Position numbers and translations under genes: made by a program. DNA of 64,000 nt, taken from positions 1 through 64,000 of the forward strand of contig NW_027451014.1 in NCBI RefSeq assembly GCF_964194025.1, written 5' to 3'. The stretch comes from Convolutriloba macropyga. Taxonomy: Eukaryota. Below the pieces are notes generated by a model. It saw only the letters and a program-made list of their open reading frames with translations. It did no database searches and was not told the origin of the DNA. Positions 15,881-64,000 of this stretch are shown one piece after another; position 1 is the first letter of the stretch; each line of letters opens with the position of its first letter.

Positions 15881-15916
<36 letters not shown>

Positions 15917-18215: not shown

Positions 18216-19595
18216 CACTGCTCCACAAAAGTCCGTACCCCCTTGTAAATCCCTATCACACAAATTGTGGCAATTGTCTGTCATCTATGCACTTCCTGAC
18301 TGCCATTCACGTTAGTTTCAAAGACCACCGCAAACATAATTTAGCCATTCATAGTCTTGGAGAAGAATCCACGGCATGTGGCCTTTTCGAGCCCCTGGAA
18401 TATCAGTTAAAGGCTAGCCACACTCTTGAAAATCGCCCAAGAAATCGGTACGTGAAATAGTACTGAGCAGCCGTAGGCCATACGGTGGCAGGTTGGTCAT
18501 TGATGCCAAGCTGTCACAATAGTGCACCGCTGAAAAATATCAAATTGCAAGTCCAATTCGTCATTGAGGAGGAAATGGCGTCCATATGTGGCCATTGGGT
18601 GAGGCAGAAGCTTGCCCGAATTCATGGGCAGCCCTGTGAGCGAAAAACCCAATTTCGTCATACGGGCTCAGAACGGAGCGCTGTCAAGGCCAGCGTGAGC
18701 AGAATTTTCGCCGTCCCGGGCCAAGGGCTGGGGCTTAGCCCGGGTCAAAATCGATTGAGACCATAAAAAAGGGTACCTTGTTTCCTCACTAAAAAGATAT
18801 GGCCATTTGAAGTTTTCGTGCAGCCTGAAACTGGGCCAAGTCGCCATATTTTGGCACAAATGCCTCATTGTAATGACCACTCCCTAAGGATGATGCATGC
18901 ACTCCCATCCCACTCACATGAGGTGCAAAAACAAGCATTTTCAAGGCCTCCCCCACCTTTGGCATGGGCCCCTTTCCTACTCCCTTTCCAACCTTTTTTG
19001 CATTTTTCCAGTGAGAGGGTTAAAGGGGCACCACTGGTCAGGGCTCCCCTTACCACGTTGGGCAATGGCCCTCCCCACCAACCCTTGTGCACGATGCACT
19101 ATCACCATGGGTTGGTTGGCGCACGAATAGCATGGCTTGAGTGTCTCATCCATGGTGGAAGGACTCCAGATGGTGTCAACAAGGGGCCAAAATCGGGTCG
19201 CTCGAAATCACCAGCAAAGCACCACCAACTCATGGGGCCCTAGTGTTGTAGGGTGTGGCCTTATGGGTCCAAGCTATGCATGACGAGAGACACATTATCC
19301 TTGCTACGATGTTATAAGGAACTGAGAAGTGATCACTCATGTCTCGAAATGTGACAATATTTTTAGTTTCAGGCAAAATCGAAGTAAACTCAACATGGAA
19401 TTGCCTGACCATGGGCACCCCCACCCACCATATAATGCATAACCTTACCATTGCGTTGACATCTAAGCCATGTAACGAGTCATAATGCATTGTTCTGCAG
19501 CCAAGGGAGCCAATGATGGTTTCGTAACTCAATGCATTGGCCTTTGACAAAATTATGGGAAAACTTTAGGGGGTGCAAACTTTTGTGGAGCAGTG
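18216..19595. mobile_element. Element A copy 1: 1380-bp non-autonomous TIR element
   Basis: TIRs CACTGCTCCACAAAAGTCCGTACCCCCT / AGGGGGTGCAAACTTTTGTGGAGCAGTG (17 bp perfect, 25/28 overall). Preceded by TA. No ORF over 141 aa and none recognisable. Confidence 0.9.
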
Positions 19596-19636
19596 TGGGG
19601 CAGTAGTTTCCCCACCAGATTCACATACATAGGAGT

Positions 19637-19641
19637 TTACA
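19637..19641 (-). terminator. Candidate chlorophyte-type polyadenylation signal TGTAA in the transposase 3' UTR (present in every T copy)
   Basis: Minus strand AAGCAC-TGTAA-ACTCC, ~30 nt after the TAA stop and ~40 nt before the element end. Confidence 0.45.
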
Positions 19642-19669
19642 GTGCTTTAACCCAGTTGCATTCTTGGGC

Positions 19670-20746
19670 TTAATACTTTGTGACGCCCCCTCTAGCATCT
19701 ATGCATGCTTGCACTCGGTTTGGGATGGAGTTGTAGAATTTCATGAGTGTCTCATGGGGCATGTTGTCCCATTCTTCTTGCAGCGCATTTTGGAAATTTT
19801 GTTTTGTGAGCCCTGGTCTGTTGTTCACTTTCTTGGCTACCCAGCCCCATACATTCTCAATCCAGCTGAGATCGGGGCTTTTGGCAGGCCAATCTAGTAC
19901 CTTGAAGTCTTCTTGCTCAGATAGCCACCTAGTAACCTTCTTGGCAGTGTGGGCCTTGGCATTGTCTTGCTGCCAGACCCAATAAGCACCCATCCTGGCC
20001 CTGCTTGTGTGGGGCATCCTGGGCCTCATGAGTTCCCTGGCTGCTGGGATGAGCTTCTCCTTCAAGAGATCCAAGTACACCGTTGCATTCACGCCTTTGG
20101 AGTCCGCATGCATGCCTGTGGTCCCCACAGTGGCAAACAGGGGGCTCTTTCCATACTTGGTCACCACTGCATAGGCATGCACCTTGAAGCTGTGAGTTTC
20201 TGCAGCAATTACTGGTGGCTCTTCTCCATACATCACCCACACCTTGTCCCCAGGGCCACGAGATACAAGCCAGAAGTTCTTGCTGTCACTGATAGCCGTG
20301 TCTTCCCATGGGCTATTGCCATACAAGCCTTGCATCTCGATGCAAAACTGCTCCCTGGCTGTCTTGTGTTGTTCAGTCAGAGTTGGCTTCTTTTTGGGCT
20401 TCATACGCTGCCCCATGTGCTTTCGAATGAACTTTCTGATAGACTCTGCACTCGCTTCAATGCCCAGGCTGTCCCTCACGCGATTAGCGATGATAGAGCA
20501 CGCCAATTGTTGACGGACGCCGTCCTCCACCAGCTGCATTAGCTCAGGGTTGGTTGCTGCCAGCTTGGCAGGCCTCCCAACCCGCTTACTGTCCTGCACG
20601 TCTTGGGTGAGCCTGTGACGCTGCACCCATTTCTTGACTGTCTTGACTCCGCATTTGTGCTTACGTGCCACTTGCTTGAAGTTGCCAAGCTGTTCGTAGC
20701 TCAAAACTAGCCGCCATCGCTTGGCGACACTCGTAGGAGAGCGCAT
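19670..20746 (-). CDS. IS630/Tc1/mariner DD35E transposase (358 aa from ATG), copy T1
   Basis: N-terminal HTH region (QVARKHKCGVKTVKKWVQR), GRP motif, KPKKKPTLT linker, ISD, WQQDNAKAH, WPAKSPDLSWIENVWG and C-terminal CIDARGG.TKY. 35 residues lie between the second D and the E. The ORF-track start is GTG; the first ATG (ACCATG) is 12 nt downstream. Confidence 0.97.
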   Translation of the reverse strand: MRSPTSVAKRWRLVLSYEQLGNFKQVARKHKCGVKTVKKWVQRHRLTQDVQDSKRVGRPAKLAATNPELMQLVEDGVRQQLACSIIANRVRDSLGIEASAESIRKFIRKHMGQRMKPKKKPTLTEQHKTAREQFCIEMQGLYGNSPWEDTAISDSKNFWLVSRGPGDKVWVMYGEEPPVIAAETHSFKVHAYAVVTKYGKSPLFATVGTTGMHADSKGVNATVYLDLLKEKLIPAARELMRPRMPHTSRARMGAYWVWQQDNAKAHTAKKVTRWLSEQEDFKVLDWPAKSPDLSWIENVWGWVAKKVNNRPGLTKQNFQNALQEEWDNMPHETLMKFYNSIPNRVQACIDARGGVTKY

Positions 20747-20794
20747 GGTGAAGCGCACAGCAAAATACAGTATGAGCCCACCCCAGAAGTTTGA

Positions 20795-20805
20795 GCTATA
20801 TTTAG
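20795..20805 (-). promoter_or_regulatory. TATA-like element upstream of the transposase
   Basis: Minus strand CTAAATATAGC about 50-55 nt upstream of the ATG; same in all T copies. Confidence 0.35.
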
Positions 20806-20933
20806 AAATTGTGGAGAATTCACTGCCTCAAGGCCTTTGGCCAGTCAGGAAGCATTAAGTGGCATCATAGAACCACACGTCAGCATTAAAACGTACCAAC
20901 GTACCACTGATAATCCTTTGTTCTTTTGCCCCA

Positions 20934-22313
20934 CACTGCTCCACAAAAGTCCGTACCCCCTTGTAAATCCCTATCACACAAATTGTGGCAATTGTCTGTC
21001 ATCTATGCACTTCCTGACTGCCATTCACGTTAGTTTCAAAGACCACCGCAAACATAATTTAGCCATTCATAGTCTTGGAGAAGAATCCACGGCATGTGGC
21101 CTTTTCGAGCCCCTGGAATATCAGTTAAAGGCTAGCCACACTCTTGAAAATCGCCCAAGAAATCGGTACGTGAAATAGTACTGAGCAGCCGTAGGCCATA
21201 CGGTGGCAGGTTGGTCATTGATGCCAAGCTGTCACAATAGTGCACCGCTGAAAAATATCAAATTGCAAGTCCAATTCGTCATTGAGGAGGAAATGGCGTC
21301 CATATGTGGCCATTGGGTGAGGCAGAAGCTTGCCCGAATTCATGGGCAGCCCTGTGAGCGAAAAACCCAATTTCGTCATACGGGCTCAGAACGGAGCGCT
21401 GTCAAGGCCAGCGTGAGCAGAATTTTCGCCGTCCCGGGCCAAGGGCTGGGGCTTAGCCCGGGTCAAAATCGATTGAGACCATAAAAAAGGGTACCTTGTT
21501 TCCTCACTAAAAAGATATGGCCATTTGAAGTTTTCGTGCAGCCTGAAACTGGGCCAAGTCGCCATATTTTGGCACAAATGCCTCATTGTAATGACCACTC
21601 CCTAAGGATGATGCATGCACTCCCATCCCACTCACATGAGGTGCAAAAACAAGCATTTTCAAGGCCTCCCCCACCTTTGGCATGGGCCCCTTTCCTACTC
21701 CCTTTCCAACCTTTTTTGCATTTTTCCAGTGAGAGGGTTAAAGGGGCACCACTGGTCAGGGCTCCCCTTACCACGTTGGGCAATGGCCCTCCCCACCAAC
21801 CCTTGTGCACGATGCACTATCACCATGGGTTGGTTGGCGCACGAATAGCATGGCTTGAGTGTCTCATCCATGGTGGAAGGACTCCAGATGGTGTCAACAA
21901 GGGGCCAAAATCGGGTCGCTCGAAATCACCAGCAAAGCACCACCAACTCATGGGGCCCTAGTGTTGTAGGGTGTGGCCTTATGGGTCCAAGCTATGCATG
22001 ACGAGAGACACATTATCCTTGCTACGATGTTATAAGGAACTGAGAAGTGATCACTCATGTCTCGAAATGTGACAATATTTTTAGTTTCAGGCAAAATCGA
22101 AGTAAACTCAACATGGAATTGCCTGACCATGGGCACCCCCACCCACCATATAATGCATAACCTTACCATTGCGTTGACATCTAAGCCATGTAACGAGTCA
22201 TAATGCATTGTTCTGCAGCCAAGGGAGCCAATGATGGTTTCGTAACTCAATGCATTGGCCTTTGACAAAATTATGGGAAAACTTTAGGGGGTGCAAACTT
22301 TTGTGGAGCAGTG
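20934..22313. mobile_element. Element A copy 2
   Basis: Same TIRs as copy 1; flanked directly by T cores (CCCCA|CACTG...CAGTG|TGGGG), no TA. Confidence 0.9.
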
Positions 22314-22387
22314 TGGGGCAGTAGTTTCCCCACCAGATTCACATACATAGGAGTTTACAGTGCTTTAACCCAGTTGCATTCTTGGGC

Positions 22388-23464
22388 TTAATACTTTGTG
22401 ACGCCCCCTCTAGCATCTATGCATGCTTGCACTCGGTTTGGGATGGAGTTGTAGAATTTCATGAGTGTCTCATGGGGCATGTTGTCCCATTCTTCTTGCA
22501 GCGCATTTTGGAAATTTTGTTTTGTGAGCCCTGGTCTGTTGTTCACTTTCTTGGCTACCCAGCCCCATACATTCTCAATCCAGCTGAGATCGGGGCTTTT
22601 GGCAGGCCAATCTAGTACCTTGAAGTCTTCTTGCTCAGATAGCCACCTAGTAACCTTCTTGGCAGTGTGGGCCTTGGCATTGTCTTGCTGCCAGACCCAA
22701 TAAGCACCCATCCTGGCCCTGCTTGTGTGGGGCATCCTGGGCCTCATGAGTTCCCTGGCTGCTGGGATGAGCTTCTCCTTCAAGAGATCCAAGTACACCG
22801 TTGCATTCACGCCTTTGGAGTCCGCATGCATGCCTGTGGTCCCCACAGTGGCAAACAGGGGGCTCTTTCCATACTTGGTCACCACTGCATAGGCATGCAC
22901 CTTGAAGCTGTGAGTTTCTGCAGCAATTACTGGTGGCTCTTCTCCATACATCACCCACACCTTGTCCCCAGGGCCACGAGATACAAGCCAGAAGTTCTTG
23001 CTGTCACTGATAGCCGTGTCTTCCCATGGGCTATTGCCATACAAGCCTTGCATCTCGATGCAAAACTGCTCCCTGGCTGTCTTGTGTTGTTCAGTCAGAG
23101 TTGGCTTCTTTTTGGGCTTCATACGCTGCCCCATGTGCTTTCGAATGAACTTTCTGATAGACTCTGCACTCGCTTCAATGCCCAGGCTGTCCCTCACGCG
23201 ATTAGCGATGATAGAGCACGCCAATTGTTGACGGACGCCGTCCTCCACCAGCTGCATTAGCTCAGGGTTGGTTGCTGCCAGCTTGGCAGGCCTCCCAACC
23301 CGCTTACTGTCCTGCACGTCTTGGGTGAGCCTGTGACGCTGCACCCATTTCTTGACTGTCTTGACTCCGCATTTGTGCTTACGTGCCACTTGCTTGAAGT
23401 TGCCAAGCTGTTCGTAGCTCAAAACTAGCCGCCATCGCTTGGCGACACTCGTAGGAGAGCGCAT
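22388..23464 (-). CDS. DD35E transposase T2
   Basis: Protein identical to T1. Confidence 0.95.
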   Translation of the reverse strand: MRSPTSVAKRWRLVLSYEQLGNFKQVARKHKCGVKTVKKWVQRHRLTQDVQDSKRVGRPAKLAATNPELMQLVEDGVRQQLACSIIANRVRDSLGIEASAESIRKFIRKHMGQRMKPKKKPTLTEQHKTAREQFCIEMQGLYGNSPWEDTAISDSKNFWLVSRGPGDKVWVMYGEEPPVIAAETHSFKVHAYAVVTKYGKSPLFATVGTTGMHADSKGVNATVYLDLLKEKLIPAARELMRPRMPHTSRARMGAYWVWQQDNAKAHTAKKVTRWLSEQEDFKVLDWPAKSPDLSWIENVWGWVAKKVNNRPGLTKQNFQNALQEEWDNMPHETLMKFYNSIPNRVQACIDARGGVTKY

Positions 23465-23728
23465 GGTGAAGCGCACAGCAAAATACAGTATGAGCCCACC
23501 CCAGAAGTTTGAGCTATATTTAGAAATTGTGGAGAATTCACTGCCTCAAGGCCTTTGGCCAGTCAGGAAGCATTAAGTGGCATCATAGAACCACACGTCA
23601 GCATTAAAACGTACCAACGTACCACTGATAATCCTTTGTTCTTTTGCCCCACTGTGGGGCAGTAGTTTCCCCACCAGATTCACATACATAGGAGTTTACA
23701 GTGCTTTAACCCAGTTGCATTCTTGGGC

Positions 23729-24804
23729 TTAATACTTTGTGACGCCCCCTCTAGCATCTATGCATGCTTGCACTCGGTTTGGGATGGAGTTGTAGAATTT
23801 CATGAGTGTCTCATGGGGCATGTTGTCCCATTCTTCTTGCAGCGCATTTTGGAAATTTTGTTTTGTGAGCCCTGGTCTGTTGTTCACTTTCTTGCTACCC
23901 AGCCCCATACATTCTCAATCCAGCTGAGATCGGGGCTTTTGGCAGGCCAATCTAGTACCTTGAAGTCTTCTTGCTCAGATAGCCACCTAGTAACCTTCTT
24001 GGCAGTGTGGGCCTTGGCATTGTCTTGCTGCCAGACCCAATAAGCACCCATCCTGGCCCTGCTTGTGTGGGGCATCCTGGGCCTCATGAGTTCCCTGGCT
24101 GCTGGGATGAGCTTCTCCTTCAAGAGATCCAAGTACACCGTTGCATTCACGCCTTTGGAGTCCGCATGCATGCCTGTGGTCCCCACAGTGGCAAACAGGG
24201 GGCTCTTTCCATACTTGGTCACCACTGCATAGGCATGCACCTTGAAGCTGTGAGTTTCTGCAGCAATTACTGGTGGCTCTTCTCCATACATCACCCACAC
24301 CTTGTCCCCAGGGCCACGAGATACAAGCCAGAAGTTCTTGCTGTCACTGATAGCCGTGTCTTCCCATGGGCTATTGCCATACAAGCCTTGCATCTCGATG
24401 CAAAACTGCTCCCTGGCTGTCTTGTGTTGTTCAGTCAGAGTTGGCTTCTTTTTGGGCTTCATACGCTGCCCCATGTGCTTTCGAATGAACTTTCTGATAG
24501 ACTCTGCACTCGCTTCAATGCCCAGGCTGTCCCTCACGCGATTAGCGATGATAGAGCACGCCAATTGTTGACGGACGCCGTCCTCCACCAGCTGCATTAG
24601 CTCAGGGTTGGTTGCTGCCAGCTTGGCAGGCCTCCCAACCCGCTTACTGTCCTGCACGTCTTGGGTGAGCCTGTGACGCTGCACCCATTTCTTGACTGTC
24701 TTGACTCCGCATTTGTGCTTACGTGCCACTTGCTTGAAGTTGCCAAGCTGTTCGTAGCTCAAAACTAGCCGCCATCGCTTGGCGACACTCGTAGGAGAGC
24801 GCAT
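23729..24804 (-). pseudogene. DD35E transposase T3, frameshifted
   Basis: 1-bp deletion at ~23894 (CTTGCTACCC vs CTTGGCTACCC) truncates the protein after WGWVARK. Could be a sequencing error. Confidence 0.8.
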
Positions 24805-24991
24805 GGTGAAGCGCACAGCAAAATACAGTATGAGCCCACCCCAGAAGTTTGAGCTATATTTAGAAATTGTGGAGAATTCACTGCCTCAAGGCCTTTGGCC
24901 AGTCAGGAAGCATTAAGTGGCATCATAGAACCACACGTCAGCATTAAAACGTACCAACGTACCACTGATAATCCTTTGTTCTTTTGCCCCA

Positions 24992-26371
24992 CACTGCTCC
25001 ACAAAAGTCCGTACCCCCTTGTAAATCCCTATCACACAAATTGTGGCAATTGTCTGTCATCTATGCACTTCCTGACTGCCATTCACGTTAGTTTCAAAGA
25101 CCACCGCAAACATAATTTAGCCATTCATAGTCTTGGAGAAGAATCCACGGCATGTGGCCTTTTCGAGCCCCTGGAATATCAGTTAAAGGCTAGCCACACT
25201 CTTGAAAATCGCCCAAGAAATCGGTACGTGAAATAGTACTGAGCAGCCGTAGGCCATACGGTGGCAGGTTGGTCATTGATGCCAAGCTGTCACAATAGTG
25301 CACCGCTGAAAAATATCAAATTGCAAGTCCAATTCGTCATTGAGGAGGAAATGGCGTCCATATGTGGCCATTGGGTGAGGCAGAAGCTTGCCCGAATTCA
25401 TGGGCAGCCCTGTGAGCGAAAAACCCAATTTCGTCATACGGGCTCAGAACGGAGCGCTGTCAAGGCCAGCGTGAGCAGAATTTTCGCCGTCCCGGGCCAA
25501 GGGCTGGGGCTTAGCCCGGGTCAAAATCGATTGAGACCATAAAAAAGGGTACCTTGTTTCCTCACTAAAAAGATATGGCCATTTGAAGTTTTCGTGCAGC
25601 CTGAAACTGGGCCAAGTCGCCATATTTTGGCACAAATGCCTCATTGTAATGACCACTCCCTAAGGATGATGCATGCACTCCCATCCCACTCACATGAGGT
25701 GCAAAAACAAGCATTTTCAAGGCCTCCCCCACCTTTGGCATGGGCCCCTTTCCTACTCCCTTTCCAACCTTTTTTGCATTTTTCCAGTGAGAGGGTTAAA
25801 GGGGCACCACTGGTCAGGGCTCCCCTTACCACGTTGGGCAATGGCCCTCCCCACCAACCCTTGTGCACGATGCACTATCACCATGGGTTGGTTGGCGCAC
25901 GAATAGCATGGCTTGAGTGTCTCATCCATGGTGGAAGGACTCCAGATGGTGTCAACAAGGGGCCAAAATCGGGTCGCTCGAAATCACCAGCAAAGCACCA
26001 CCAACTCATGGGGCCCTAGTGTTGTAGGGTGTGGCCTTATGGGTCCAAGCTATGCATGACGAGAGACACATTATCCTTGCTACGATGTTATAAGGAACTG
26101 AGAAGTGATCACTCATGTCTCGAAATGTGACAATATTTTTAGTTTCAGGCAAAATCGAAGTAAACTCAACATGGAATTGCCTGACCATGGGCACCCCCAC
26201 CCACCATATAATGCATAACCTTACCATTGCGTTGACATCTAAGCCATGTAACGAGTCATAATGCATTGTTCTGCAGCCAAGGGAGCCAATGATGGTTTCG
26301 TAACTCAATGCATTGGCCTTTGACAAAATTATGGGAAAACTTTAGGGGGTGCAAACTTTTGTGGAGCAGTG
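24992..26371. mobile_element. Element A copy 3
   Basis: Same TIRs and junctions as copy 2. Confidence 0.9.
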
Positions 26372-26445
26372 TGGGGCAGTAGTTTCCCCACCAGATTCAC
26401 ATACATAGGAGTTTACAGTGCTTTAACCCAGTTGCATTCTTGGGC

Positions 26446-31771: not shown

Positions 31772-31845
31772 TGGGGCAGTAGTTTCCCCACCAGATTCAC
31801 ATACATAGGAGTTTACAGTGCTTTAACCCAGTTGCATTCTTGGGC

Positions 31846-54449: not shown

Positions 54450-54713
54450 GGTGAAGCGCACAGCAAAATACAGTATGAGCCCACCCCAGAAGTTTGAGCT
54501 ATATTTAGAAATTGTGGAGAATTCACTGCCTCAAGGCCTTTGGCCAGTCAGGAAGCATTAAGTGGCATCATAGAACCACACGTCAGCATTAAAACGTACC
54601 AACGTACCACTGATAATCCTTTGTTCTTTTGCCCCACTGTGGGGCAGTAGTTTCCCCACCAGATTCACATACATAGGAGTTTACAGTGCTTTAACCCAGT
54701 TGCATTCTTGGGC

Positions 54714-55790
54714 TTAATACTTTGTGACGCCCCCTCTAGCATCTATGCATGCTTGCACTCGGTTTGGGATGGAGTTGTAGAATTTCATGAGTGTCTCATG
54801 GGGCATGTTGTCCCATTCTTCTTGCAGCGCATTTTGGAAATTTTGTTTTGTGAGCCCTGGTCTGTTGTTCACTTTCTTGGCTACCCAGCCCCATACATTC
54901 TCAATCCAGCTGAGATCGGGGCTTTTGGCAGGCCAATCTAGTACCTTGAAGTCTTCTTGCTCAGATAGCCACCTAGTAACCTTCTTGGCAGTGTGGGCCT
55001 TGGCATTGTCTTGCTGCCAGACCCAATAAGCACCCATCCTGGCCCTGCTTGTGTGGGGCATCCTGGGCCTCATGAGTTCCCTGGCTGCTGGGATGAGCTT
55101 CTCCTTCAAGAGATCCAAGTACACCGTTGCATTCACGCCTTTGGAGTCCGCATGCATGCCTGTGGTCCCCACAGTGGCAAACAGGGGGCTCTTTCCATAC
55201 TTGGTCACCACTGCATAGGCATGCACCTTGAAGCTGTGAGTTTCTGCAGCAATTACTGGTGGCTCTTCTCCATACATCACCCACACCTTGTCCCCAGGGC
55301 CACGAGATACAAGCCAGAAGTTCTTGCTGTCACTGATAGCCGTGTCTTCCCATGGGCTATTGCCATACAAGCCTTGCATCTCGATGCAAAACTGCTCCCT
55401 GGCTGTCTTGTGTTGTTCAGTCAGAGTTGGCTTCTTTTTGGGCTTCATACGCTGCCCCATGTGCTTTCGAATGAACTTTCTGATAGACTCTGCACTCGCT
55501 TCAATGCCCAGGCTGTCCCTCACGCGATTAGCGATGATAGAGCACGCCAATTGTTGACGGACGCCGTCCTCCACCAGCTGCATTAGCTCAGGGTTGGTTG
55601 CTGCCAGCTTGGCAGGCCTCCCAACCCGCTTACTGTCCTGCACGTCTTGGGTGAGCCTGTGACGCTGCACCCATTTCTTGACTGTCTTGACTCCGCATTT
55701 GTGCTTACGTGCCACTTGCTTGAAGTTGCCAAGCTGTTCGTAGCTCAAAACTAGCCGCCATCGCTTGGCGACACTCGTAGGAGAGCGCAT
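54714..55790 (-). CDS. DD35E transposase T22
   Basis: Protein identical to T1. Confidence 0.95.
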   Translation of the reverse strand: MRSPTSVAKRWRLVLSYEQLGNFKQVARKHKCGVKTVKKWVQRHRLTQDVQDSKRVGRPAKLAATNPELMQLVEDGVRQQLACSIIANRVRDSLGIEASAESIRKFIRKHMGQRMKPKKKPTLTEQHKTAREQFCIEMQGLYGNSPWEDTAISDSKNFWLVSRGPGDKVWVMYGEEPPVIAAETHSFKVHAYAVVTKYGKSPLFATVGTTGMHADSKGVNATVYLDLLKEKLIPAARELMRPRMPHTSRARMGAYWVWQQDNAKAHTAKKVTRWLSEQEDFKVLDWPAKSPDLSWIENVWGWVAKKVNNRPGLTKQNFQNALQEEWDNMPHETLMKFYNSIPNRVQACIDARGGVTKY

Positions 55791-56054
55791 GGTGAAGCGC
55801 ACAGCAAAATACAGTATGAGCCCACCCCAGAAGTTTGAGCTATATTTAGAAATTGTGGAGAATTCACTGCCTCAAGGCCTTTGGCCAGTCAGGAAGCATT
55901 AAGTGGCATCATAGAACCACACGTCAGCATTAAAACGTACCAACGTACCACTGATAATCCTTTGTTCTTTTGCCCCACTGTGGGGCAGTAGTTTCCCCAC
56001 CAGATTCACATACATAGGAGTTTACAGTGCTTTAACCCAGTTGCATTCTTGGGC

Positions 56055-57131
56055 TTAATACTTTGTGACGCCCCCTCTAGCATCTATGCATGCTTGCACT
56101 CGGTTTGGGATGGAGTTGTAGAATTTCATGAGTGTCTCATGGGGCATGTTGTCCCATTCTTCTTGCAGCGCATTTTGGAAATTTTGTTTTGTGAGCCCTG
56201 GTCTGTTGTTCACTTTCTTGGCTACCCAGCCCCATACATTCTCAATCCAGCTGAGATCGGGGCTTTTGGCAGGCCAATCTAGTACCTTGAAGTCTTCTTG
56301 CTCAGATAGCCACCTAGTAACCTTCTTGGCAGTGTGGGCCTTGGCATTGTCTTGCTGCCAGACCCAATAAGCACCCATCCTGGCCCTGCTTGTGTGGGGC
56401 ATCCTGGGCCTCATGAGTTCCCTGGCTGCTGGGATGAGCTTCTCCTTCAAGAGATCCAAGTACACCGTTGCATTCACGCCTTTGGAGTCCGCATGCATGC
56501 CTGTGGTCCCCACAGTGGCAAACAGGGGGCTCTTTCCATACTTGGTCACCACTGCATAGGCATGCACCTTGAAGCTGTGAGTTTCTGCAGCAATTACTGG
56601 TGGCTCTTCTCCATACATCACCCACACCTTGTCCCCAGGGCCACGAGATACAAGCCAGAAGTTCTTGCTGTCACTGATAGCCGTGTCTTCCCATGGGCTA
56701 TTGCCATACAAGCCTTGCATCTCGATGCAAAACTGCTCCCTGGCTGTCTTGTGTTGTTCAGTCAGAGTTGGCTTCTTTTTGGGCTTCATACGCTGCCCCA
56801 TGTGCTTTCGAATGAACTTTCTGATAGACTCTGCACTCGCTTCAATGCCCAGGCTGTCCCTCACGCGATTAGCGATGATAGAGCACGCCAATTGTTGACG
56901 GACGCCGTCCTCCACCAGCTGCATTAGCTCAGGGTTGGTTGCTGCCAGCTTGGCAGGCCTCCCAACCCGCTTACTGTCCTGCACGTCTTGGGTGAGCCTG
57001 TGACGCTGCACCCATTTCTTGACTGTCTTGACTCCGCATTTGTGCTTACGTGCCACTTGCTTGAAGTTGCCAAGCTGTTCGTAGCTCAAAACTAGCCGCC
57101 ATCGCTTGGCGACACTCGTAGGAGAGCGCAT
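56055..57131 (-). CDS. DD35E transposase T23
   Basis: Protein identical to T1. Confidence 0.95.
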   Translation of the reverse strand: MRSPTSVAKRWRLVLSYEQLGNFKQVARKHKCGVKTVKKWVQRHRLTQDVQDSKRVGRPAKLAATNPELMQLVEDGVRQQLACSIIANRVRDSLGIEASAESIRKFIRKHMGQRMKPKKKPTLTEQHKTAREQFCIEMQGLYGNSPWEDTAISDSKNFWLVSRGPGDKVWVMYGEEPPVIAAETHSFKVHAYAVVTKYGKSPLFATVGTTGMHADSKGVNATVYLDLLKEKLIPAARELMRPRMPHTSRARMGAYWVWQQDNAKAHTAKKVTRWLSEQEDFKVLDWPAKSPDLSWIENVWGWVAKKVNNRPGLTKQNFQNALQEEWDNMPHETLMKFYNSIPNRVQACIDARGGVTKY

Positions 57132-57395
57132 GGTGAAGCGCACAGCAAAATACAGTATGAGCCCACCCCAGAAGTTTGAGCTATATTTAGAAATTGTGGA
57201 GAATTCACTGCCTCAAGGCCTTTGGCCAGTCAGGAAGCATTAAGTGGCATCATAGAACCACACGTCAGCATTAAAACGTACCAACGTACCACTGATAATC
57301 CTTTGTTCTTTTGCCCCACTGTGGGGCAGTAGTTTCCCCACCAGATTCACATACATAGGAGTTTACAGTGCTTTAACCCAGTTGCATTCTTGGGC

Positions 57396-58472
57396 TTAAT
57401 ACTTTGTGACGCCCCCTCTAGCATCTATGCATGCTTGCACTCGGTTTGGGATGGAGTTGTAGAATTTCATGAGTGTCTCATGGGGCATGTTGTCCCATTC
57501 TTCTTGCAGCGCATTTTGGAAATTTTGTTTTGTGAGCCCTGGTCTGTTGTTCACTTTCTTGGCTACCCAGCCCCATACATTCTCAATCCAGCTGAGATCG
57601 GGGCTTTTGGCAGGCCAATCTAGTACCTTGAAGTCTTCTTGCTCAGATAGCCACCTAGTAACCTTCTTGGCAGTGTGGGCCTTGGCATTGTCTTGCTGCC
57701 AGACCCAATAAGCACCCATCCTGGCCCTGCTTGTGTGGGGCATCCTGGGCCTCATGAGTTCCCTGGCTGCTGGGATGAGCTTCTCCTTCAAGAGATCCAA
57801 GTACACCGTTGCATTCACGCCTTTGGAGTCCGCATGCATGCCTGTGGTCCCCACAGTGGCAAACAGGGGGCTCTTTCCATACTTGGTCACCACTGCATAG
57901 GCATGCACCTTGAAGCTGTGAGTTTCTGCAGCAATTACTGGTGGCTCTTCTCCATACATCACCCACACCTTGTCCCCAGGGCCACGAGATACAAGCCAGA
58001 AGTTCTTGCTGTCACTGATAGCCGTGTCTTCCCATGGGCTATTGCCATACAAGCCTTGCATCTCGATGCAAAACTGCTCCCTGGCTGTCTTGTGTTGTTC
58101 AGTCAGAGTTGGCTTCTTTTTGGGCTTCATACGCTGCCCCATGTGCTTTCGAATGAACTTTCTGATAGACTCTGCACTCGCTTCAATGCCCAGGCTGTCC
58201 CTCACGCGATTAGCGATGATAGAGCACGCCAATTGTTGACGGACGCCGTCCTCCACCAGCTGCATTAGCTCAGGGTTGGTTGCTGCCAGCTTGGCAGGCC
58301 TCCCAACCCGCTTACTGTCCTGCACGTCTTGGGTGAGCCTGTGACGCTGCACCCATTTCTTGACTGTCTTGACTCCGCATTTGTGCTTACGTGCCACTTG
58401 CTTGAAGTTGCCAAGCTGTTCGTAGCTCAAAACTAGCCGCCATCGCTTGGCGACACTCGTAGGAGAGCGCAT
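57396..58472 (-). CDS. DD35E transposase T24
   Basis: Protein identical to T1. Confidence 0.95.
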   Translation of the reverse strand: MRSPTSVAKRWRLVLSYEQLGNFKQVARKHKCGVKTVKKWVQRHRLTQDVQDSKRVGRPAKLAATNPELMQLVEDGVRQQLACSIIANRVRDSLGIEASAESIRKFIRKHMGQRMKPKKKPTLTEQHKTAREQFCIEMQGLYGNSPWEDTAISDSKNFWLVSRGPGDKVWVMYGEEPPVIAAETHSFKVHAYAVVTKYGKSPLFATVGTTGMHADSKGVNATVYLDLLKEKLIPAARELMRPRMPHTSRARMGAYWVWQQDNAKAHTAKKVTRWLSEQEDFKVLDWPAKSPDLSWIENVWGWVAKKVNNRPGLTKQNFQNALQEEWDNMPHETLMKFYNSIPNRVQACIDARGGVTKY

Positions 58473-58736
58473 GGTGAAGCGCACAGCAAAATACAGTATG
58501 AGCCCACCCCAGAAGTTTGAGCTATATTTAGAAATTGTGGAGAATTCACTGCCTCAAGGCCTTTGGCCAGTCAGGAAGCATTAAGTGGCATCATAGAACC
58601 ACACGTCAGCATTAAAACGTACCAACGTACCACTGATAATCCTTTGTTCTTTTGCCCCACAGTGGGGCAGTAGTTTCCCCACCAGATTCACATACATAGG
58701 AGTTTACAGTGCTTTAACCCAGTTGCATTCTTGGGC

Positions 58737-59813
58737 TTAATACTTTGTGACGCCCCCTCTAGCATCTATGCATGCTTGCACTCGGTTTGGGATGGAGTTG
58801 TAGAATTTCATGAGTGTCTCATGGGGCATGTTGTCCCATTCTTCTTGCAGCGCATTTTGGAAATTTTGTTTTGTGAGCCCTGGTCTGTTGTTCACTTTCT
58901 TGGCTACCCAGCCCCATACATTCTCAATCCAGCTGAGATCGGGGCTTTTGGCAGGCCAATCTAGTACCTTGAAGTCTTCTTGCTCAGATAGCCACCTAGT
59001 AACCTTCTTGGCAGTGTGGGCCTTGGCATTGTCTTGCTGCCAGACCCAATAAGCACCCATCCTGGCCCTGCTTGTGTGGGGCATCCTGGGCCTCATGAGT
59101 TCCCTGGCTGCTGGGATGAGCTTCTCCTTCAAGAGATCCAAGTACACCGTTGCATTCACGCCTTTGGAGTCCGCATGCATGCCTGTGGTCCCCACAGTGG
59201 CAAACAGGGGGCTCTTTCCATACTTGGTCACCACTGCATAGGCATGCACCTTGAAGCTGTGAGTTTCTGCAGCAATTACTGGTGGCTCTTCTCCATACAT
59301 CACCCACACCTTGTCCCCAGGGCCACGAGATACAAGCCAGAAGTTCTTGCTGTCACTGATAGCCGTGTCTTCCCATGGGCTATTGCCATACAAGCCTTGC
59401 ATCTCGATGCAAAACTGCTCCCTGGCTGTCTTGTGTTGTTCAGTCAGAGTTGGCTTCTTTTTGGGCTTCATACGCTGCCCCATGTGCTTTCGAATGAACT
59501 TTCTGATAGACTCTGCACTCGCTTCAATGCCCAGGCTGTCCCTCACGCGATTAGCGATGATAGAGCACGCCAATTGTTGACGGACGCCGTCCTCCACCAG
59601 CTGCATTAGCTCAGGGTTGGTTGCTGCCAGCTTGGCAGGCCTCCCAACCCGCTTACTGTCCTGCACGTCTTGGGTGAGCCTGTGACGCTGCACCCATTTC
59701 TTGACTGTCTTGACTCCGCATTTGTGCTTACGTGCCACTTGCTTGAAGTTGCCAAGCTGTTCGTAGCTCAAAACTAGCCGCCATCGCTTGGCGACACTCG
59801 TAGGAGAGCGCAT
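58737..59813 (-). CDS. DD35E transposase T25
   Basis: Protein identical to T1. Confidence 0.95.
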   Translation of the reverse strand: MRSPTSVAKRWRLVLSYEQLGNFKQVARKHKCGVKTVKKWVQRHRLTQDVQDSKRVGRPAKLAATNPELMQLVEDGVRQQLACSIIANRVRDSLGIEASAESIRKFIRKHMGQRMKPKKKPTLTEQHKTAREQFCIEMQGLYGNSPWEDTAISDSKNFWLVSRGPGDKVWVMYGEEPPVIAAETHSFKVHAYAVVTKYGKSPLFATVGTTGMHADSKGVNATVYLDLLKEKLIPAARELMRPRMPHTSRARMGAYWVWQQDNAKAHTAKKVTRWLSEQEDFKVLDWPAKSPDLSWIENVWGWVAKKVNNRPGLTKQNFQNALQEEWDNMPHETLMKFYNSIPNRVQACIDARGGVTKY

Positions 59814-60077
59814 GGTGAAGCGCACAGCAAAATACAGTATGAGCCCACCCCAGAAGTTTGAGCTATATTTAGAAATTGTGGAGAATTCACTGCCTCAAGG
59901 CCTTTGGCCAGTCAGGAAGCATTAAGTGGCATCATAGAACCACACGTCAGCATTAAAACGTACCAACGTACCACTGATAATCCTTTGTTCTTTTGCCCCA
60001 CTGTGGGGCAGTAGTTTCCCCACCAGATTCACATACATAGGAGTTTACAGTGCTTTAACCCAGTTGCATTCTTGGGC

Positions 60078-61154
60078 TTAATACTTTGTGACGCCCCCTC
60101 TAGCATCTATGCATGCTTGCACTCGGTTTGGGATGGAGTTGTAGAATTTCATGAGTGTCTCATGGGGCATGTTGTCCCATTCTTCTTGCAGCGCATTTTG
60201 GAAATTTTGTTTTGTGAGCCCTGGTCTGTTGTTCACTTTCTTGGCTACCCAGCCCCATACATTCTCAATCCAGCTGAGATCGGGGCTTTTGGCAGGCCAA
60301 TCTAGTACCTTGAAGTCTTCTTGCTCAGATAGCCACCTAGTAACCTTCTTGGCAGTGTGGGCCTTGGCATTGTCTTGCTGCCAGACCCAATAAGCACCCA
60401 TCCTGGCCCTGCTTGTGTGGGGCATCCTGGGCCTCATGAGTTCCCTGGCTGCTGGGATGAGCTTCTCCTTCAAGAGATCCAAGTACACCGTTGCATTCAC
60501 GCCTTTGGAGTCCGCATGCATGCCTGTGGTCCCCACAGTGGCAAACAGGGGGCTCTTTCCATACTTGGTCACCACTGCATAGGCATGCACCTTGAAGCTG
60601 TGAGTTTCTGCAGCAATTACTGGTGGCTCTTCTCCATACATCACCCACACCTTGTCCCCAGGGCCACGAGATACAAGCCAGAAGTTCTTGCTGTCACTGA
60701 TAGCCGTGTCTTCCCATGGGCTATTGCCATACAAGCCTTGCATCTCGATGCAAAACTGCTCCCTGGCTGTCTTGTGTTGTTCAGTCAGAGTTGGCTTCTT
60801 TTTGGGCTTCATACGCTGCCCCATGTGCTTTCGAATGAACTTTCTGATAGACTCTGCACTCGCTTCAATGCCCAGGCTGTCCCTCACGCGATTAGCGATG
60901 ATAGAGCACGCCAATTGTTGACGGACGCCGTCCTCCACCAGCTGCATTAGCTCAGGGTTGGTTGCTGCCAGCTTGGCAGGCCTCCCAACCCGCTTACTGT
61001 CCTGCACGTCTTGGGTGAGCCTGTGACGCTGCACCCATTTCTTGACTGTCTTGACTCCGCATTTGTGCTTACGTGCCACTTGCTTGAAGTTGCCAAGCTG
61101 TTCGTAGCTCAAAACTAGCCGCCATCGCTTGGCGACACTCGTAGGAGAGCGCAT
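60078..61154 (-). CDS. DD35E transposase T26
   Basis: Protein identical to T1. Confidence 0.95.
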   Translation of the reverse strand: MRSPTSVAKRWRLVLSYEQLGNFKQVARKHKCGVKTVKKWVQRHRLTQDVQDSKRVGRPAKLAATNPELMQLVEDGVRQQLACSIIANRVRDSLGIEASAESIRKFIRKHMGQRMKPKKKPTLTEQHKTAREQFCIEMQGLYGNSPWEDTAISDSKNFWLVSRGPGDKVWVMYGEEPPVIAAETHSFKVHAYAVVTKYGKSPLFATVGTTGMHADSKGVNATVYLDLLKEKLIPAARELMRPRMPHTSRARMGAYWVWQQDNAKAHTAKKVTRWLSEQEDFKVLDWPAKSPDLSWIENVWGWVAKKVNNRPGLTKQNFQNALQEEWDNMPHETLMKFYNSIPNRVQACIDARGGVTKY

Positions 61155-61418
61155 GGTGAAGCGCACAGCAAAATACAGTATGAGCCCACCCCAGAAGTTT
61201 GAGCTATATTTAGAAATTGTGGAGAATTCACTGCCTCAAGGCCTTTGGCCAGTCAGGAAGCATTAAGTGGCATCATAGAACCACACGTCAGCATTAAAAC
61301 GTACCAACGTACCACTGATAATCCTTTGTTCTTTTGCCCCACTGTGGGGCAGTAGTTTCCCCACCAGATTCACATACATAGGAGTTTACAGTGCTTTAAC
61401 CCAGTTGCATTCTTGGGC

Positions 61419-62495
61419 TTAATACTTTGTGACGCCCCCTCTAGCATCTATGCATGCTTGCACTCGGTTTGGGATGGAGTTGTAGAATTTCATGAGTGTC
61501 TCATGGGGCATGTTGTCCCATTCTTCTTGCAGCGCATTTTGGAAATTTTGTTTTGTGAGCCCTGGTCTGTTGTTCACTTTCTTGGCTACCCAGCCCCATA
61601 CATTCTCAATCCAGCTGAGATCGGGGCTTTTGGCAGGCCAATCTAGTACCTTGAAGTCTTCTTGCTCAGATAGCCACCTAGTAACCTTCTTGGCAGTGTG
61701 GGCCTTGGCATTGTCTTGCTGCCAGACCCAATAAGCACCCATCCTGGCCCTGCTTGTGTGGGGCATCCTGGGCCTCATGAGTTCCCTGGCTGCTGGGATG
61801 AGCTTCTCCTTCAAGAGATCCAAGTACACCGTTGCATTCACGCCTTTGGAGTCCGCATGCATGCCTGTGGTCCCCACAGTGGCAAACAGGGGGCTCTTTC
61901 CATACTTGGTCACCACTGCATAGGCATGCACCTTGAAGCTGTGAGTTTCTGCAGCAATTACTGGTGGCTCTTCTCCATACATCACCCACACCTTGTCCCC
62001 AGGGCCACGAGATACAAGCCAGAAGTTCTTGCTGTCACTGATAGCCGTGTCTTCCCATGGGCTATTGCCATACAAGCCTTGCATCTCGATGCAAAACTGC
62101 TCCCTGGCTGTCTTGTGTTGTTCAGTCAGAGTTGGCTTCTTTTTGGGCTTCATACGCTGCCCCATGTGCTTTCGAATGAACTTTCTGATAGACTCTGCAC
62201 TCGCTTCAATGCCCAGGCTGTCCCTCACGCGATTAGCGATGATAGAGCACGCCAATTGTTGACGGACGCCGTCCTCCACCAGCTGCATTAGCTCAGGGTT
62301 GGTTGCTGCCAGCTTGGCAGGCCTCCCAACCCGCTTACTGTCCTGCACGTCTTGGGTGAGCCTGTGACGCTGCACCCATTTCTTGACTGTCTTGACTCCG
62401 CATTTGTGCTTACGTGCCACTTGCTTGAAGTTGCCAAGCTGTTCGTAGCTCAAAACTAGCCGCCATCGCTTGGCGACACTCGTAGGAGAGCGCAT
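61419..62495 (-). CDS. DD35E transposase T27
   Basis: Protein identical to T1. Confidence 0.95.
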   Translation of the reverse strand: MRSPTSVAKRWRLVLSYEQLGNFKQVARKHKCGVKTVKKWVQRHRLTQDVQDSKRVGRPAKLAATNPELMQLVEDGVRQQLACSIIANRVRDSLGIEASAESIRKFIRKHMGQRMKPKKKPTLTEQHKTAREQFCIEMQGLYGNSPWEDTAISDSKNFWLVSRGPGDKVWVMYGEEPPVIAAETHSFKVHAYAVVTKYGKSPLFATVGTTGMHADSKGVNATVYLDLLKEKLIPAARELMRPRMPHTSRARMGAYWVWQQDNAKAHTAKKVTRWLSEQEDFKVLDWPAKSPDLSWIENVWGWVAKKVNNRPGLTKQNFQNALQEEWDNMPHETLMKFYNSIPNRVQACIDARGGVTKY

Positions 62496-62759
62496 GGTGA
62501 AGCGCACAGCAAAATACAGTATGAGCCCACCCCAGAAGTTTGAGCTATATTTAGAAATTGTGGAGAATTCACTGCCTCAAGGCCTTTGGCCAGTCAGGAA
62601 GCATTAAGTGGCATCATAGAACCACACGTCAGCATTAAAACGTACCAACGTACCACTGATAATCCTTTGTTCTTTTGCCCCACAGTGGGGCAGTAGTTTC
62701 CCCACCAGATTCACATACATAGGAGTTTACAGTGCTTTAACCCAGTTGCATTCTTGGGC

Positions 62760-63836
62760 TTAATACTTTGTGACGCCCCCTCTAGCATCTATGCATGCTT
62801 GCACTCGGTTTGGGATGGAGTTGTAGAATTTCATGAGTGTCTCATGGGGCATGTTGTCCCATTCTTCTTGCAGCGCATTTTGGAAATTTTGTTTTGTGAG
62901 CCCTGGTCTGTTGTTCACTTTCTTGGCTACCCAGCCCCATACATTCTCAATCCAGCTGAGATCGGGGCTTTTGGCAGGCCAATCTAGTACCTTGAAGTCT
63001 TCTTGCTCAGATAGCCACCTAGTAACCTTCTTGGCAGTGTGGGCCTTGGCATTGTCTTGCTGCCAGACCCAATAAGCACCCATCCTGGCCCTGCTTGTGT
63101 GGGGCATCCTGGGCCTCATGAGTTCCCTGGCTGCTGGGATGAGCTTCTCCTTCAAGAGATCCAAGTACACCGTTGCATTCACGCCTTTGGAGTCCGCATG
63201 CATGCCTGTGGTCCCCACAGTGGCAAACAGGGGGCTCTTTCCATACTTGGTCACCACTGCATAGGCATGCACCTTGAAGCTGTGAGTTTCTGCAGCAATT
63301 ACTGGTGGCTCTTCTCCATACATCACCCACACCTTGTCCCCAGGGCCACGAGATACAAGCCAGAAGTTCTTGCTGTCACTGATAGCCGTGTCTTCCCATG
63401 GGCTATTGCCATACAAGCCTTGCATCTCGATGCAAAACTGCTCCCTGGCTGTCTTGTGTTGTTCAGTCAGAGTTGGCTTCTTTTTGGGCTTCATACGCTG
63501 CCCCATGTGCTTTCGAATGAACTTTCTGATAGACTCTGCACTCGCTTCAATGCCCAGGCTGTCCCTCACGCGATTAGCGATGATAGAGCACGCCAATTGT
63601 TGACGGACGCCGTCCTCCACCAGCTGCATTAGCTCAGGGTTGGTTGCTGCCAGCTTGGCAGGCCTCCCAACCCGCTTACTGTCCTGCACGTCTTGGGTGA
63701 GCCTGTGACGCTGCACCCATTTCTTGACTGTCTTGACTCCGCATTTGTGCTTACGTGCCACTTGCTTGAAGTTGCCAAGCTGTTCGTAGCTCAAAACTAG
63801 CCGCCATCGCTTGGCGACACTCGTAGGAGAGCGCAT
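62760..63836 (-). CDS. DD35E transposase T28
   Basis: Protein identical to T1; the element end lies beyond the window. Confidence 0.95.
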   Translation of the reverse strand: MRSPTSVAKRWRLVLSYEQLGNFKQVARKHKCGVKTVKKWVQRHRLTQDVQDSKRVGRPAKLAATNPELMQLVEDGVRQQLACSIIANRVRDSLGIEASAESIRKFIRKHMGQRMKPKKKPTLTEQHKTAREQFCIEMQGLYGNSPWEDTAISDSKNFWLVSRGPGDKVWVMYGEEPPVIAAETHSFKVHAYAVVTKYGKSPLFATVGTTGMHADSKGVNATVYLDLLKEKLIPAARELMRPRMPHTSRARMGAYWVWQQDNAKAHTAKKVTRWLSEQEDFKVLDWPAKSPDLSWIENVWGWVAKKVNNRPGLTKQNFQNALQEEWDNMPHETLMKFYNSIPNRVQACIDARGGVTKY

Positions 63837-64000
63837 GGTGAAGCGCACAGCAAAATACAGTATGAGCCCACCCCAGAAGTTTGAGCTATATTTAGAAATT
63901 GTGGAGAATTCACTGCCTCAAGGCCTTTGGCCAGTCAGGAAGCATTAAGTGGCATCATAGAACCACACGTCAGCATTAAAACGTACCAACGTACCACTGA

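What the first reader, a model, noticed from the sequence alone, without database searches (positions are those of the whole stretch)
18216..64000. Two-partner cassette-like array of end-joined Tc1/mariner elements (28 transposase units + 6 non-coding TIR units, >45 kb)
Seen: two internally unrelated ~1.35-kb modules are concatenated, all in one orientation, with no spacer and no TA duplication between them; 27 of 28 transposase ORFs are intact. Established: IS630/Tc1/mariner elements normally disperse singly into TA sites. Tandem double insertions keep a TSD between copies. The closest precedent I know, the Drosophila Bari1 heterochromatic cluster, is a single-element array with uniform junctions. 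Inference: an autonomous element and a different non-autonomous partner share one junction rule and build a growing array, using each other's ends as the landing site instead of TA. This looks like a cassette-array or concatemer mode of transposon propagation. Whether it serves the host (centromeric, telomeric or small-RNA locus) cannot be read from this window.
Basis: partly seen in the sequence, partly recalled or inferred. Interest (0 to 1): 0.92.

Follow-up and report, generated by a model that had tools for sequence, protein, structure and literature searches.

The report
Two-module Tc1/mariner tandem array
This animal genome holds a real array of hundreds of intact jumping-gene enzyme units and a non-coding partner joined end to end by a shared 3-letter overlap, and diverged relatives in other public assemblies are built the same way, so the design is old and conserved rather than a one-off accident.

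Summary
From 18216 to the window end there are 28 T units (1341 bp, with a 362-aa DD35E Tc1/mariner transposase on the minus strand, 27 intact). There are also 6 identical non-coding A units (1377-bp period, 29-bp TIRs). All lie in one orientation, in the order A T A TT A TTT A TTT A TTTTT A T(14).

The array starts with TA next to an A end. Every internal joint is a 3-nt overlap of termini with no TA. T-T joints read CTG (16) or CAG (6). These are the two outcomes published for a Sleeping Beauty circle junction.

Public short-read contigs give about 390x (T) and about 100x (A) the flank depth. The T-T joint has about 85% of the T depth, so this is not an assembly artefact.

The main new result is that T lineages only 44-89% identical, from other public assemblies, show the same T-plus-partner layout and the same joint rule. 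A ends are co-diverging and TA-flanked. T evolves at dN/dS 0.16, and A carries a conserved hairpin core.

My best reading is joints made by end-joining of transposase-type 3-nt staggered cuts, followed by growth through recombination. T may be a transposase gene lying outside the TIR-bounded mobile module. The closest precedent is the Drosophila Bari1 cluster.

The scan also noted a second such array on another piece of this genome (s1-214599).

The parts
18214..18215 (.). TA dinucleotide flanking the outermost A end (left edge of the array)
   Evidence: Contigs of other A copies diverge into different flanks at 18209-18214.
18216..19595 (-). A unit 1, non-coding, tips CAC...GTG. TIRs lie at about 18216-18243 and 19568-19595. 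Orientation is given relative to the transposase.
   Evidence: Inverted repeat I3. No codon periodicity. No Rfam or tRNA hit.
18716..18743 (-). Conserved hairpin core of A: a 10-bp stem that is invariant in four lineages. The same site occurs in every A copy, at 21434, 25492, 30892, 36291 and 44373.
19593..20936 (-). T run 1 (1 unit)
20934..22313 (-). A unit 2
   Evidence: 100% identical to A1.
22311..24994 (-). T run 2 (2 units). The second unit (23652-24991) has a 1-nt deletion near 23894 that cuts the ORF to 310 aa.
24992..26371 (-). A unit 3
26369..30394 (-). T run 3 (3 units)
30392..31771 (-). A unit 4
31769..35793 (-). T run 4 (3 units)
35791..37170 (-). A unit 5
37168..43875 (-). T run 5 (5 units)
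43873..45252 (-). A unit 6
45250..64000 (-). T run 6 (14 units; the last is cut by the window end)
50691..51779 (-). Representative transposase ORF (362 aa from GTG, 358 from the first ATG). It has a paired-like HTH plus a DDE core, with D158, D265 and E301 (DD35E).
50607..50623 (.). Example T-T joint: a 17-bp palindrome of 8-bp arms around a central T or A. There are 22 such joints in the window, 16 with T and 6 with A.

Best explanation
This is a genuine chromosomal, high-copy head-to-tail array built from the two modules of one Tc1/mariner system.

Module T carries the transposase gene. Its ends share only about 10 nt (CAGTGGGGCA). Module A is a non-coding element with 29-bp TIRs that inserts at TA and is also dispersed in the genome.

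The joints are 'cohesive-end' joints: neighbouring modules overlap by their terminal trinucleotide. That is what results when DNA ends cut by a Tc1/mariner transposase are ligated by the host. The cut places the 3' end exactly at the tip and the 5' strand 3 nt inside, leaving 3-nt 3' overhangs. The same joint arises whether the event is circularisation, end-to-end joining, or repair after a partner is excised.

The array is anchored in the chromosome by an outer A end next to TA. It then grows and shrinks by homology-driven processes: unequal exchange, re-entry of circles by recombination, or rolling-circle copying. These processes keep all units in one orientation and nearly identical.

Shown here: the anatomy, the joint rule, the copy number, the recurrence in relatives, and purifying selection on T.

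Inferred: that the transposase makes the cuts, that the stagger is 3 nt, and the mode of growth.
For: Joint rule in the window: T-T is TGCCCCA-C(T/A)G-TGGGGCA, T-A keeps CAC, and A-T keeps GTG. No joint has TA.

The middle base of the T-T trinucleotide is the only common polymorphism in 37.5 kb of T sequence. It is CTG in 16 joints and CAG in 6, on different backgrounds. L001 shows another pattern of the same two alleles. PMC6943129 states that a canonical Sleeping Beauty circle junction has a central T:T mismatch resolved to CTG or CAG, and that excision footprints are TACAGTA or TACTGTA.

Bari1 arrays lack the first 2 nt of each copy and have no TSD. By my reading of the published junction, that is the 2-nt version of the same rule.

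Recurrence in diverged T lineages:
- L002 and L003 (89% aa): T-A-T.
- L004 (61%) and L005 (59%): contigs that close on themselves as a T+A unit of 2698 or 2761 bp.
- L006 (45%): flank-A'-T-T-A'-TA.
- L088 (49%): A-T-A.
- L090 (44%): A-T-T-A-TA.
- L007 (44%): at least 10 tandem T units.
In these lineages the joints are 3 nt of the form C-N-G; the one exception is the T-T joint of L090, which is 2 nt.

A TIRs co-diverge with T and keep a common motif. The transposase is intact in six lineages. dN/dS is 0.16 at dS 0.36 against L002, and the DDE triad is invariant.

Depth figures: T about 390x, A about 100x, and the T-T joint about 85% of the T depth. A's left end runs into several different flanks.
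Against: No experiment or read-level evidence shows cleavage, circles or a 3-nt stagger for this enzyme.

A's tips in this genome are CAC...GTG. Canonical repair after A excision would therefore not give C(A/T)G, and A-T overhangs would pair at only 1-2 of 3 positions.

Random ligation of free ends would give both orientations, and only one is seen, so recombination has to be added to the model.

The CTG/CAG polymorphism sits at the centre of a perfect 17-bp palindrome. It could be a template-switch hotspot instead of a repair outcome. L007, whose joint is not a long palindrome, shows CTG at all 10 joints.

Some CAG joints may be copies of each other made by multi-unit duplication.

Host identities of the relatives are unknown. 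Several T lineages could live in one host genome.
Confidence: 0.6

Rival explanations
1. Plain transposon-derived satellite. Three accidental joints (T-T, T-A, A-T) arose once in an ancestor. Everything since is unequal crossing-over and concerted evolution, with no continuing role for the transposase. The relatives share the layout only by descent.
For: All six A copies and their joints are identical. T copies differ at only 11 columns. Patterns such as CAG-CTG-CAG with shared linked variants suggest multi-unit duplications. Copy number differs about six-fold between samples, as is usual for satellites.
Against: The transposase ORF is under purifying selection (dN/dS 0.16) and is intact in all six lineages examined, which a dead satellite would not keep. 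Joint trinucleotides differ between lineages while still obeying the rule: CTG against GTG at A-T, and CG at T-T in L090. This points to repeated formation. A is still mobile, being dispersed with other flanks.
Confidence: 0.2
2. T and A are two transposons that integrate specifically into each other's ends (the joint acts as the target site instead of TA), and so extend a cassette array.
For: A spacing widens with distance from the array edge, with T runs of 1, 2, 3, 3, 5 and at least 14. That could reflect local hopping.
Against: Tc1/mariner integration duplicates its target, whereas here 3 nt are lost or shared. All six A copies have the same orientation and are identical. The A-to-T orientation is the same in four lineages, which independent insertions would not give. 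A elsewhere uses TA.
Confidence: 0.1
3. The repeats are mainly extrachromosomal (circles or rolling-circle concatemers of T and T+A), and the link to the chromosome at 18216 is an assembly join.
For: Short-read contigs of relatives close on themselves at about 2.7 kb. One long-read contig of a relative is labelled circular (L007). The last 150 nt of flank is a repeat, so short reads cannot bridge it.
Against: L006 and L090 show arrays embedded in other DNA, with TA at the A end. Tandem arrays also produce self-closing contigs. A second array is noted on another piece of the genome.
Confidence: 0.05
4. Assembly artefact or cloned construct with only one or two real copies.
For: None found.
Against: Depth is about 390x the flank for T, and the T-T joint contig has depth of about 1800. 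There is an independent contig, L001, and relatives occur in many assemblies.
Confidence: 0.02

Closest known systems
Bari1 heterochromatic clusters of Drosophila melanogaster (h39, about 80 copies, and a 6-copy X-linked cluster)
   Same: Both are Tc1/mariner elements in precise head-to-tail arrays. Both have uniform joints without TA that lack a few terminal nucleotides, and both vary in copy number between strains. The origin proposed for Bari1 is a circular transposon plus rolling circle, or a dimer plus unequal exchange (PMC8834629, PMC5932611). T's transposase belongs to the same 'non-K248' group as Bari, with DNAKAH at the second catalytic D.
   Different: Bari1 is a single-element array, specific to one species, with 2 nt missing per copy. 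Here there are two partners and a 3-nt overlap. The joint trinucleotide is polymorphic. ORFs are intact and under selection. The same design is found across a whole clade of diverged transposases.
Sleeping Beauty transposon circles and canonical excision footprints
   Same: The expected circle junction is the two ends overlapping by 3 nt, with a central T:T mismatch resolved to CTG or CAG. Footprints are TA-CAG-TA or TA-CTG-TA (PMC6943129). The T-T joint alleles here are exactly these.
   Different: SB circles are episomal dead-end products seen in cell culture. Here the same junction is fixed hundreds of times in a germline array. It also links two different modules.
Tandem dimers of P and hobo made by double insertion (McGurk and Barbash 2018)
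   Same: DNA transposons forming head-to-tail tandems that can expand into arrays (PMC5932611).
   Different: Those joints keep a target-site duplication between the copies. Here no TA is present at any of the 33 internal joints.
MITE plus autonomous-partner pairs (for example Stowaway with mariner-like elements) and bacterial composite transposons or abutted-end IS junctions (from my own knowledge, not tested)
   Same: A is a non-coding TIR element presumably moved in trans by a linked transposase. An A-T(n)-A block bounded by outer A ends next to TA resembles a composite transposon. Abutted ends recall IS circle or dimer junctions.
   Different: MITEs normally share TIRs with their autonomous partner and are not physically joined to it. 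Here T's ends lack the A TIR motif, yet A and T are covalently paired in every lineage examined that has a partner.

Membership tests
IS630/Tc1/mariner transposase | RNase-H-like DDE/D catalytic triad | tested here: met
   D158, D265 and E301 are invariant in 19 aligned relatives, with 35 residues between the second D and E. Pfam DDE_3 matches.
IS630/Tc1/mariner transposase | N-terminal paired-like helix-turn-helix DNA-binding domain | tested here: met
   Pfam HTH_Tnp_Tc3_2, HTH_23 and HTH_32 match.
Tc1/mariner transposon (element level), module A | Terminal inverted repeats with 5'-CA tips, and insertion at TA | tested here: met
   A has 29-bp TIRs. TA lies at the left edge. TA follows the A end in L006 and L090. 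Only one side of any insertion is visible, so the duplication itself is not shown.
Tc1/mariner transposon (element level), module T | TIRs long enough to hold a transposase binding site, and TA duplication at its ends | tested here: not met
   The two T ends share only about 10 nt, and in L005 almost nothing. They lack the A-type motif. No T end is next to TA in the window or in any locus fetched.
Bari1-type tandem transposon cluster | Precise head-to-tail copies with an identical joint, lacking terminal nucleotides and lacking a TSD | tested here: met
   22 T-T joints are identical except for the central base, and none has TA.
Bari1-type tandem transposon cluster | An array made of a single element family | tested here: not met
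   Six A units are interspersed. The partner is also present in relatives.
Bari1-type tandem transposon cluster | Heterochromatic location | not testable with these tools
   Only 18 kb of flank is visible. It holds a GT29-domain ORF and many homopolymer tracts.
Double-insertion tandem (P or hobo type) | Target-site duplication kept inside the joint | tested here: not met
   No TA is present at any internal joint.
Traveler (DD35E) family | DD35E spacing together with phylogenetic placement in the Traveler clade | tested here: inconclusive
   The spacing is DD35E. Traveler is reported only from vertebrates with ordinary TIR/TA structure (PMC7093834). No tree was built.
Composite transposon (TIR elements flanking a cargo) | Two TIR-bearing elements bracket the cargo, with the outer ends flanked by one target duplication | tested here: inconclusive
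   L006 reads A'-T-T-A' with TA at the right end and a damaged left tip. L090 ends in A-TA. The window shows only the left end.

The most novel reading that the evidence does not exclude
An 'inside-out' or split Tc1/mariner system. The transposase gene (T) lies outside the TIR-bounded mobile module (A), and the two are held together through the enzyme's own 3-nt cohesive cuts. They propagate as A-bounded composite arrays, and perhaps as T+A circles. A is shed to new TA sites, leaving T-T joints as footprints. This architecture has been inherited and kept by selection across a whole clade of transposases.
Probability: 0.35. Interest if true: 0.9.

Novelty: new variant of a known kind. Interest (0 to 1): 0.78.

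Why it matters
The Bari1 cluster has stood for 30 years as an unexplained one-off. Its reviewers write that it has 'no comparable described examples' (PMC8834629).

Here the same kind of joint appears hundreds of times, with two partners. It is also found in many diverged relatives that still have intact, selected transposase genes.

This turns an oddity into a testable class. It offers natural material for asking how cut-and-paste transposons become satellites. It allows a test of whether transposon circles are truly dead ends. It raises the question of whether a transposase gene can persist outside the element it moves.

It also supplies an apparently active transposase with a defined non-coding substrate that could be tested directly.

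Tried and rejected
Searches on A that found nothing:
- An Rfam scan at permissive E-value and a tRNA scan of A and T found nothing relevant.
- A coding test of A found no codon periodicity in 302 substitutions against L002 and no shared ORF, so A is non-coding.

Database searches that gave little:
- The exact-sequence look-up of the 358-aa product was not on record.
It added nothing.
- The contig of P0002 (78% identity) had no retrievable DNA.

Motif and flank checks:
- An ATGGCCAT palindrome that seemed shared by both A subclades was not consistently conserved and was dropped.
- Pfam on eight further flank ORFs gave nothing.
- L089 (46% aa) has a partner with a different TIR and asymmetric tips. 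I did not force it into the rule.

Readings rejected:
- A as a decayed copy of T: there is no similarity between them.
- T-T joints as recent footprints of the present A: its CAC/GTG tips do not predict C(A/T)G.

Literature searches found no description of a two-partner Tc1/mariner array. The library is partial, so this is not proof of absence.
Full report
**What is there**

The window has no N. From 18216 to 64000 it consists only of two kinds of unit.

A BLAST of one unit against the window and parsing by end anchors give 28 T units. They have a 1341-bp period. Two are 1340 bp, and the last is cut by the window end. The same analysis gives 6 A units with a 1377-bp period.

All units share one orientation, in the order A T A TT A TTT A TTT A TTTTT A T(x14).

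T encodes, on the minus strand, a 362-aa ORF. It matches Pfam DDE_3 and HTH_Tnp_Tc3_2. Its catalytic triad is D158, D265 and E301, which gives DD35E spacing.

27 of the 28 ORFs are intact. The T at 23652-24991 has a 1-nt deletion that shortens its ORF to 310 aa.

A has 29-bp terminal inverted repeats. It has no similarity to T. It shows no codon periodicity in 302 substitutions against its nearest relative. It has no Rfam or tRNA match.

**The joints**

On the + strand the array starts ...CATA TA | CACTGCTCC. This is TA followed by an intact A tip.

The three kinds of internal joint are:
- T-A: TGCCCCA-CAC-TGCTCC
- A-T: GGAGCA-GTG-TGGGGCA
- T-T: TGCCCCA-C(T/A)G-TGGGGCA

None contains TA. A always keeps both of its own tips (CAC...GTG). 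T bodies are joined to each other through a single trinucleotide.

If T's tips are CAG...CTG, the usual Tc1-type tips, then each joint equals end one plus end two overlapped by 3 nt.

**Variation**

The six A copies are identical over 1377 bp. The 28 T copies vary at only 11 columns, nearly all singletons.

The exception is the middle base of the T-T trinucleotide. It is T in 16 joints and A in 6, on different linked backgrounds and scattered along the array.

The independent contig L001 has a further pattern of the same two alleles, and that pattern matches no block of the window.

PMC6943129 (Fig. [quoted passage not shown] It also states that donor-site footprints are TACAGTA or TACTGTA. 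Both arise because the non-transferred strand is cut a few nucleotides inside the element.

The T-T joints here are exactly those two alleles. This is the strongest sequence-level link between the joints and transposase-type cuts.

A caveat applies. The base sits at the centre of a perfect 17-bp palindrome, where template switching can also invert the centre. The relative L007, whose joint is not a long palindrome, has CTG at all ten joints.

**Not an artefact**

Logan contigs of public runs of the same organism give these word depths:
- 5.5 for the unique flank (17800-18062)
- about 500-600 for A
- about 2110-2170 for T
- about 1800 for a contig spanning a T-T joint (23538-23682)

Taken roughly, this means about 390 T and about 100 A copies per single-copy equivalent. 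About 85% of T right ends are joined to another T.

Contigs that match A from its first base run into several different upstream sequences at 18209-18214. A is therefore also dispersed, with TA-compatible flanks. No such loose ends were listed at T ends.

A run from another sample has about six-fold less T.

An ENA contig (L001) carries an A end plus 3.3 tandem T units at 100% identity.

There is a limit to this evidence. The 150 nt next to the array has depth of about 50, so it is itself repeated. The chromosomal link therefore rests on the long-read assembly alone.

An earlier first-reader note reports a second array on another piece of this genome (s1-214599). I did not check it.

**Relatives**

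A protein search found 43 relatives, many on contigs of 2.6-2.8 kb. Fetching their DNA showed the same architecture:

| Locus | aa identity to T | Layout | Joints |
|---|---|---|---|
| L002, L003 | 89% (T 87% nt, A 79% nt) | T-A-T | CAC, and CTG where the window has GTG |
| L004 | 61% | 2753-bp contig with a 55-nt terminal overlap; a 2698-bp unit of T plus an A homologue with TIR CAGTGCTCCACAAAAGTCC | CAG and CTG |
| L005 | 59% | closes as a 2761-bp T+A unit | CAG and CTG |
| L006 | 45% | long-read contig: flank-A'-T-T-A'-TA-flank | CTG, CAG, CAG |
| L088 | 49% | A-T-A | CTG and CAG |
| L090 | 44% | A-T-T-A followed by TA; A tips CAG...CCG | A-T keeps CCG; T-T is only CG |
| L007 | 44% | at least 10 tandem T units of 1283 bp, no partner | CTG |

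The partner's length is conserved at 1343-1394 bp. Its TIRs keep a common motif that co-diverges with the transposase.

Its orientation relative to T is the same in the four lineages where an internal landmark exists. That landmark is a core of about 60-115 nt, 98% identical to L002 over 60 nt against 79% for A overall. It contains an invariant 10-bp-stem hairpin shared by the window, L002, L004 and L005. Its function is unknown. L088 and L090 share a different conserved block at a similar relative position.

The transposase is intact in all six lineages compared. It evolves at dN/dS 0.16 with dS 0.36 against L002.

The hosts of the relatives are unknown. Some lineages come from the same metagenome. 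The evidence therefore concerns independent element lineages, not necessarily independent hosts.

Salt-marsh metatranscriptomes hold 7-10% of T's 31-mers. This is weak evidence for transcription.

**How it most likely works**

Shown by the data:
- The two modules form a conserved pair.
- A is a TA-inserting, dispersed element with good TIRs.
- T is a selected transposase gene.
- T's ends share only about 10 nt and lack the A-type motif.
- Arrays end in an A tip next to TA in three lineages.
- Every joint is a trinucleotide overlap.

Inferred: the transposase cuts at the tips with a 3-nt stagger, as other Tc1/mariner enzymes do, and host end-joining seals such ends to each other. One staggered break at a joint is at once the correct cut for the right end of one unit and the left end of the next. 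Excised pieces therefore have mutually cohesive ends.

Free ligation would give both orientations, and only one is seen. Growth must therefore be mostly homology-driven: unequal exchange, recombination of circles into the array, or rolling-circle copying. This also explains the near-identity of the copies.

Whether T-T joints arise from T circles or T ends, or as footprints where A was excised from an alternating T-A array, cannot be decided here. The second route is attractive because alternating 2.7-kb units dominate in the relatives. However, the present A tips (CAC/GTG) do not predict C(A/T)G by canonical repair.

**Comparison with the known**

The closest case is the Bari1 cluster: about 80 precise head-to-tail copies, each lacking its first two nucleotides, with no TSD. 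Its reviewers describe it as having no comparable example. It is explained either by a circular transposon plus rolling circle or by a dimer plus unequal exchange (PMC8834629 and PMC5932611).

By my reading, the published Bari1 joint is a full right end joined to a left end minus CA. That is a 2-nt version of the overlap rule.

T's transposase has DNAKAH at the second catalytic aspartate. This places it with the 'non-K248' group that includes Bari, Minos, Tc3 and Impala.

The differences from Bari1 are: two partners, a 3-nt overlap, a polymorphic joint, intact selected ORFs, and recurrence across a clade.

Double-insertion tandems of P and hobo are excluded because they keep a TSD in the joint.

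I found no description of a two-partner array in the searchable library.

**Verdict**

I rate this a new variant of a known kind (a Bari1-type tandem transposon array). There is a substantial chance (about 0.35) that it is something more unusual: a split system in which the transposase gene lies outside the mobile, TIR-bounded module.

Noticed in passing
window 3358-16999: The 18-kb flank is studded with long homopolymer tracts. Poly-C of 15-28 nt occurs at about 4644, 7874, 8596, 9708 and 11537. Poly-G occurs at about 3358, 15920, 16423 and 16949. There are also (GT)n runs at about 2230, 13590 and 15880. The strand switch may follow gene orientation.
   Followed up: no
window 18063-18215: The last ~150 nt before the array has Logan depth of about 50 against 5.5 further left, with loose ends at 18104, 18190 and 18199. 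The array therefore abuts another repeat of about 9 copies. Just upstream, the palindrome AGTACCCGGGTACT occurs twice, at 18038-18051 and 18058-18071.
   Followed up: partly
window 18716-18743 and the same site in each A copy: A GC-rich hairpin with a 10-bp stem inside the non-coding A unit is invariant in four element lineages whose A units are otherwise barely alignable. It has no Rfam match. Possible roles are a binding site, an origin or a small-RNA element.
   Followed up: partly
window 18216-64000: The number of T units between successive A units never decreases from the array edge inward: 1, 2, 3, 3, 5, at least 14. This could be chance, could reflect A loss or gain depending on distance from the edge, or could reflect faster expansion of longer T runs.
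   Followed up: no
window 8314-9387: An ORF with a GT29 sialyltransferase domain match. It is the only recognisable host gene piece in the flank.
   Followed up: no
L006 5608-7536: The contig carrying the A'-T-T-A' block of a relative also has an array of about 11 copies of a 174-bp tandem repeat, and a retroelement RNase H ORF nearby.
   Followed up: no
L090 1363: In this relative the T-T joint has only CG between the T bodies, so the middle (mismatch) base is missing. The A-T joint keeps A's variant tip CCG, which is also seen where A meets TA.
   Followed up: partly
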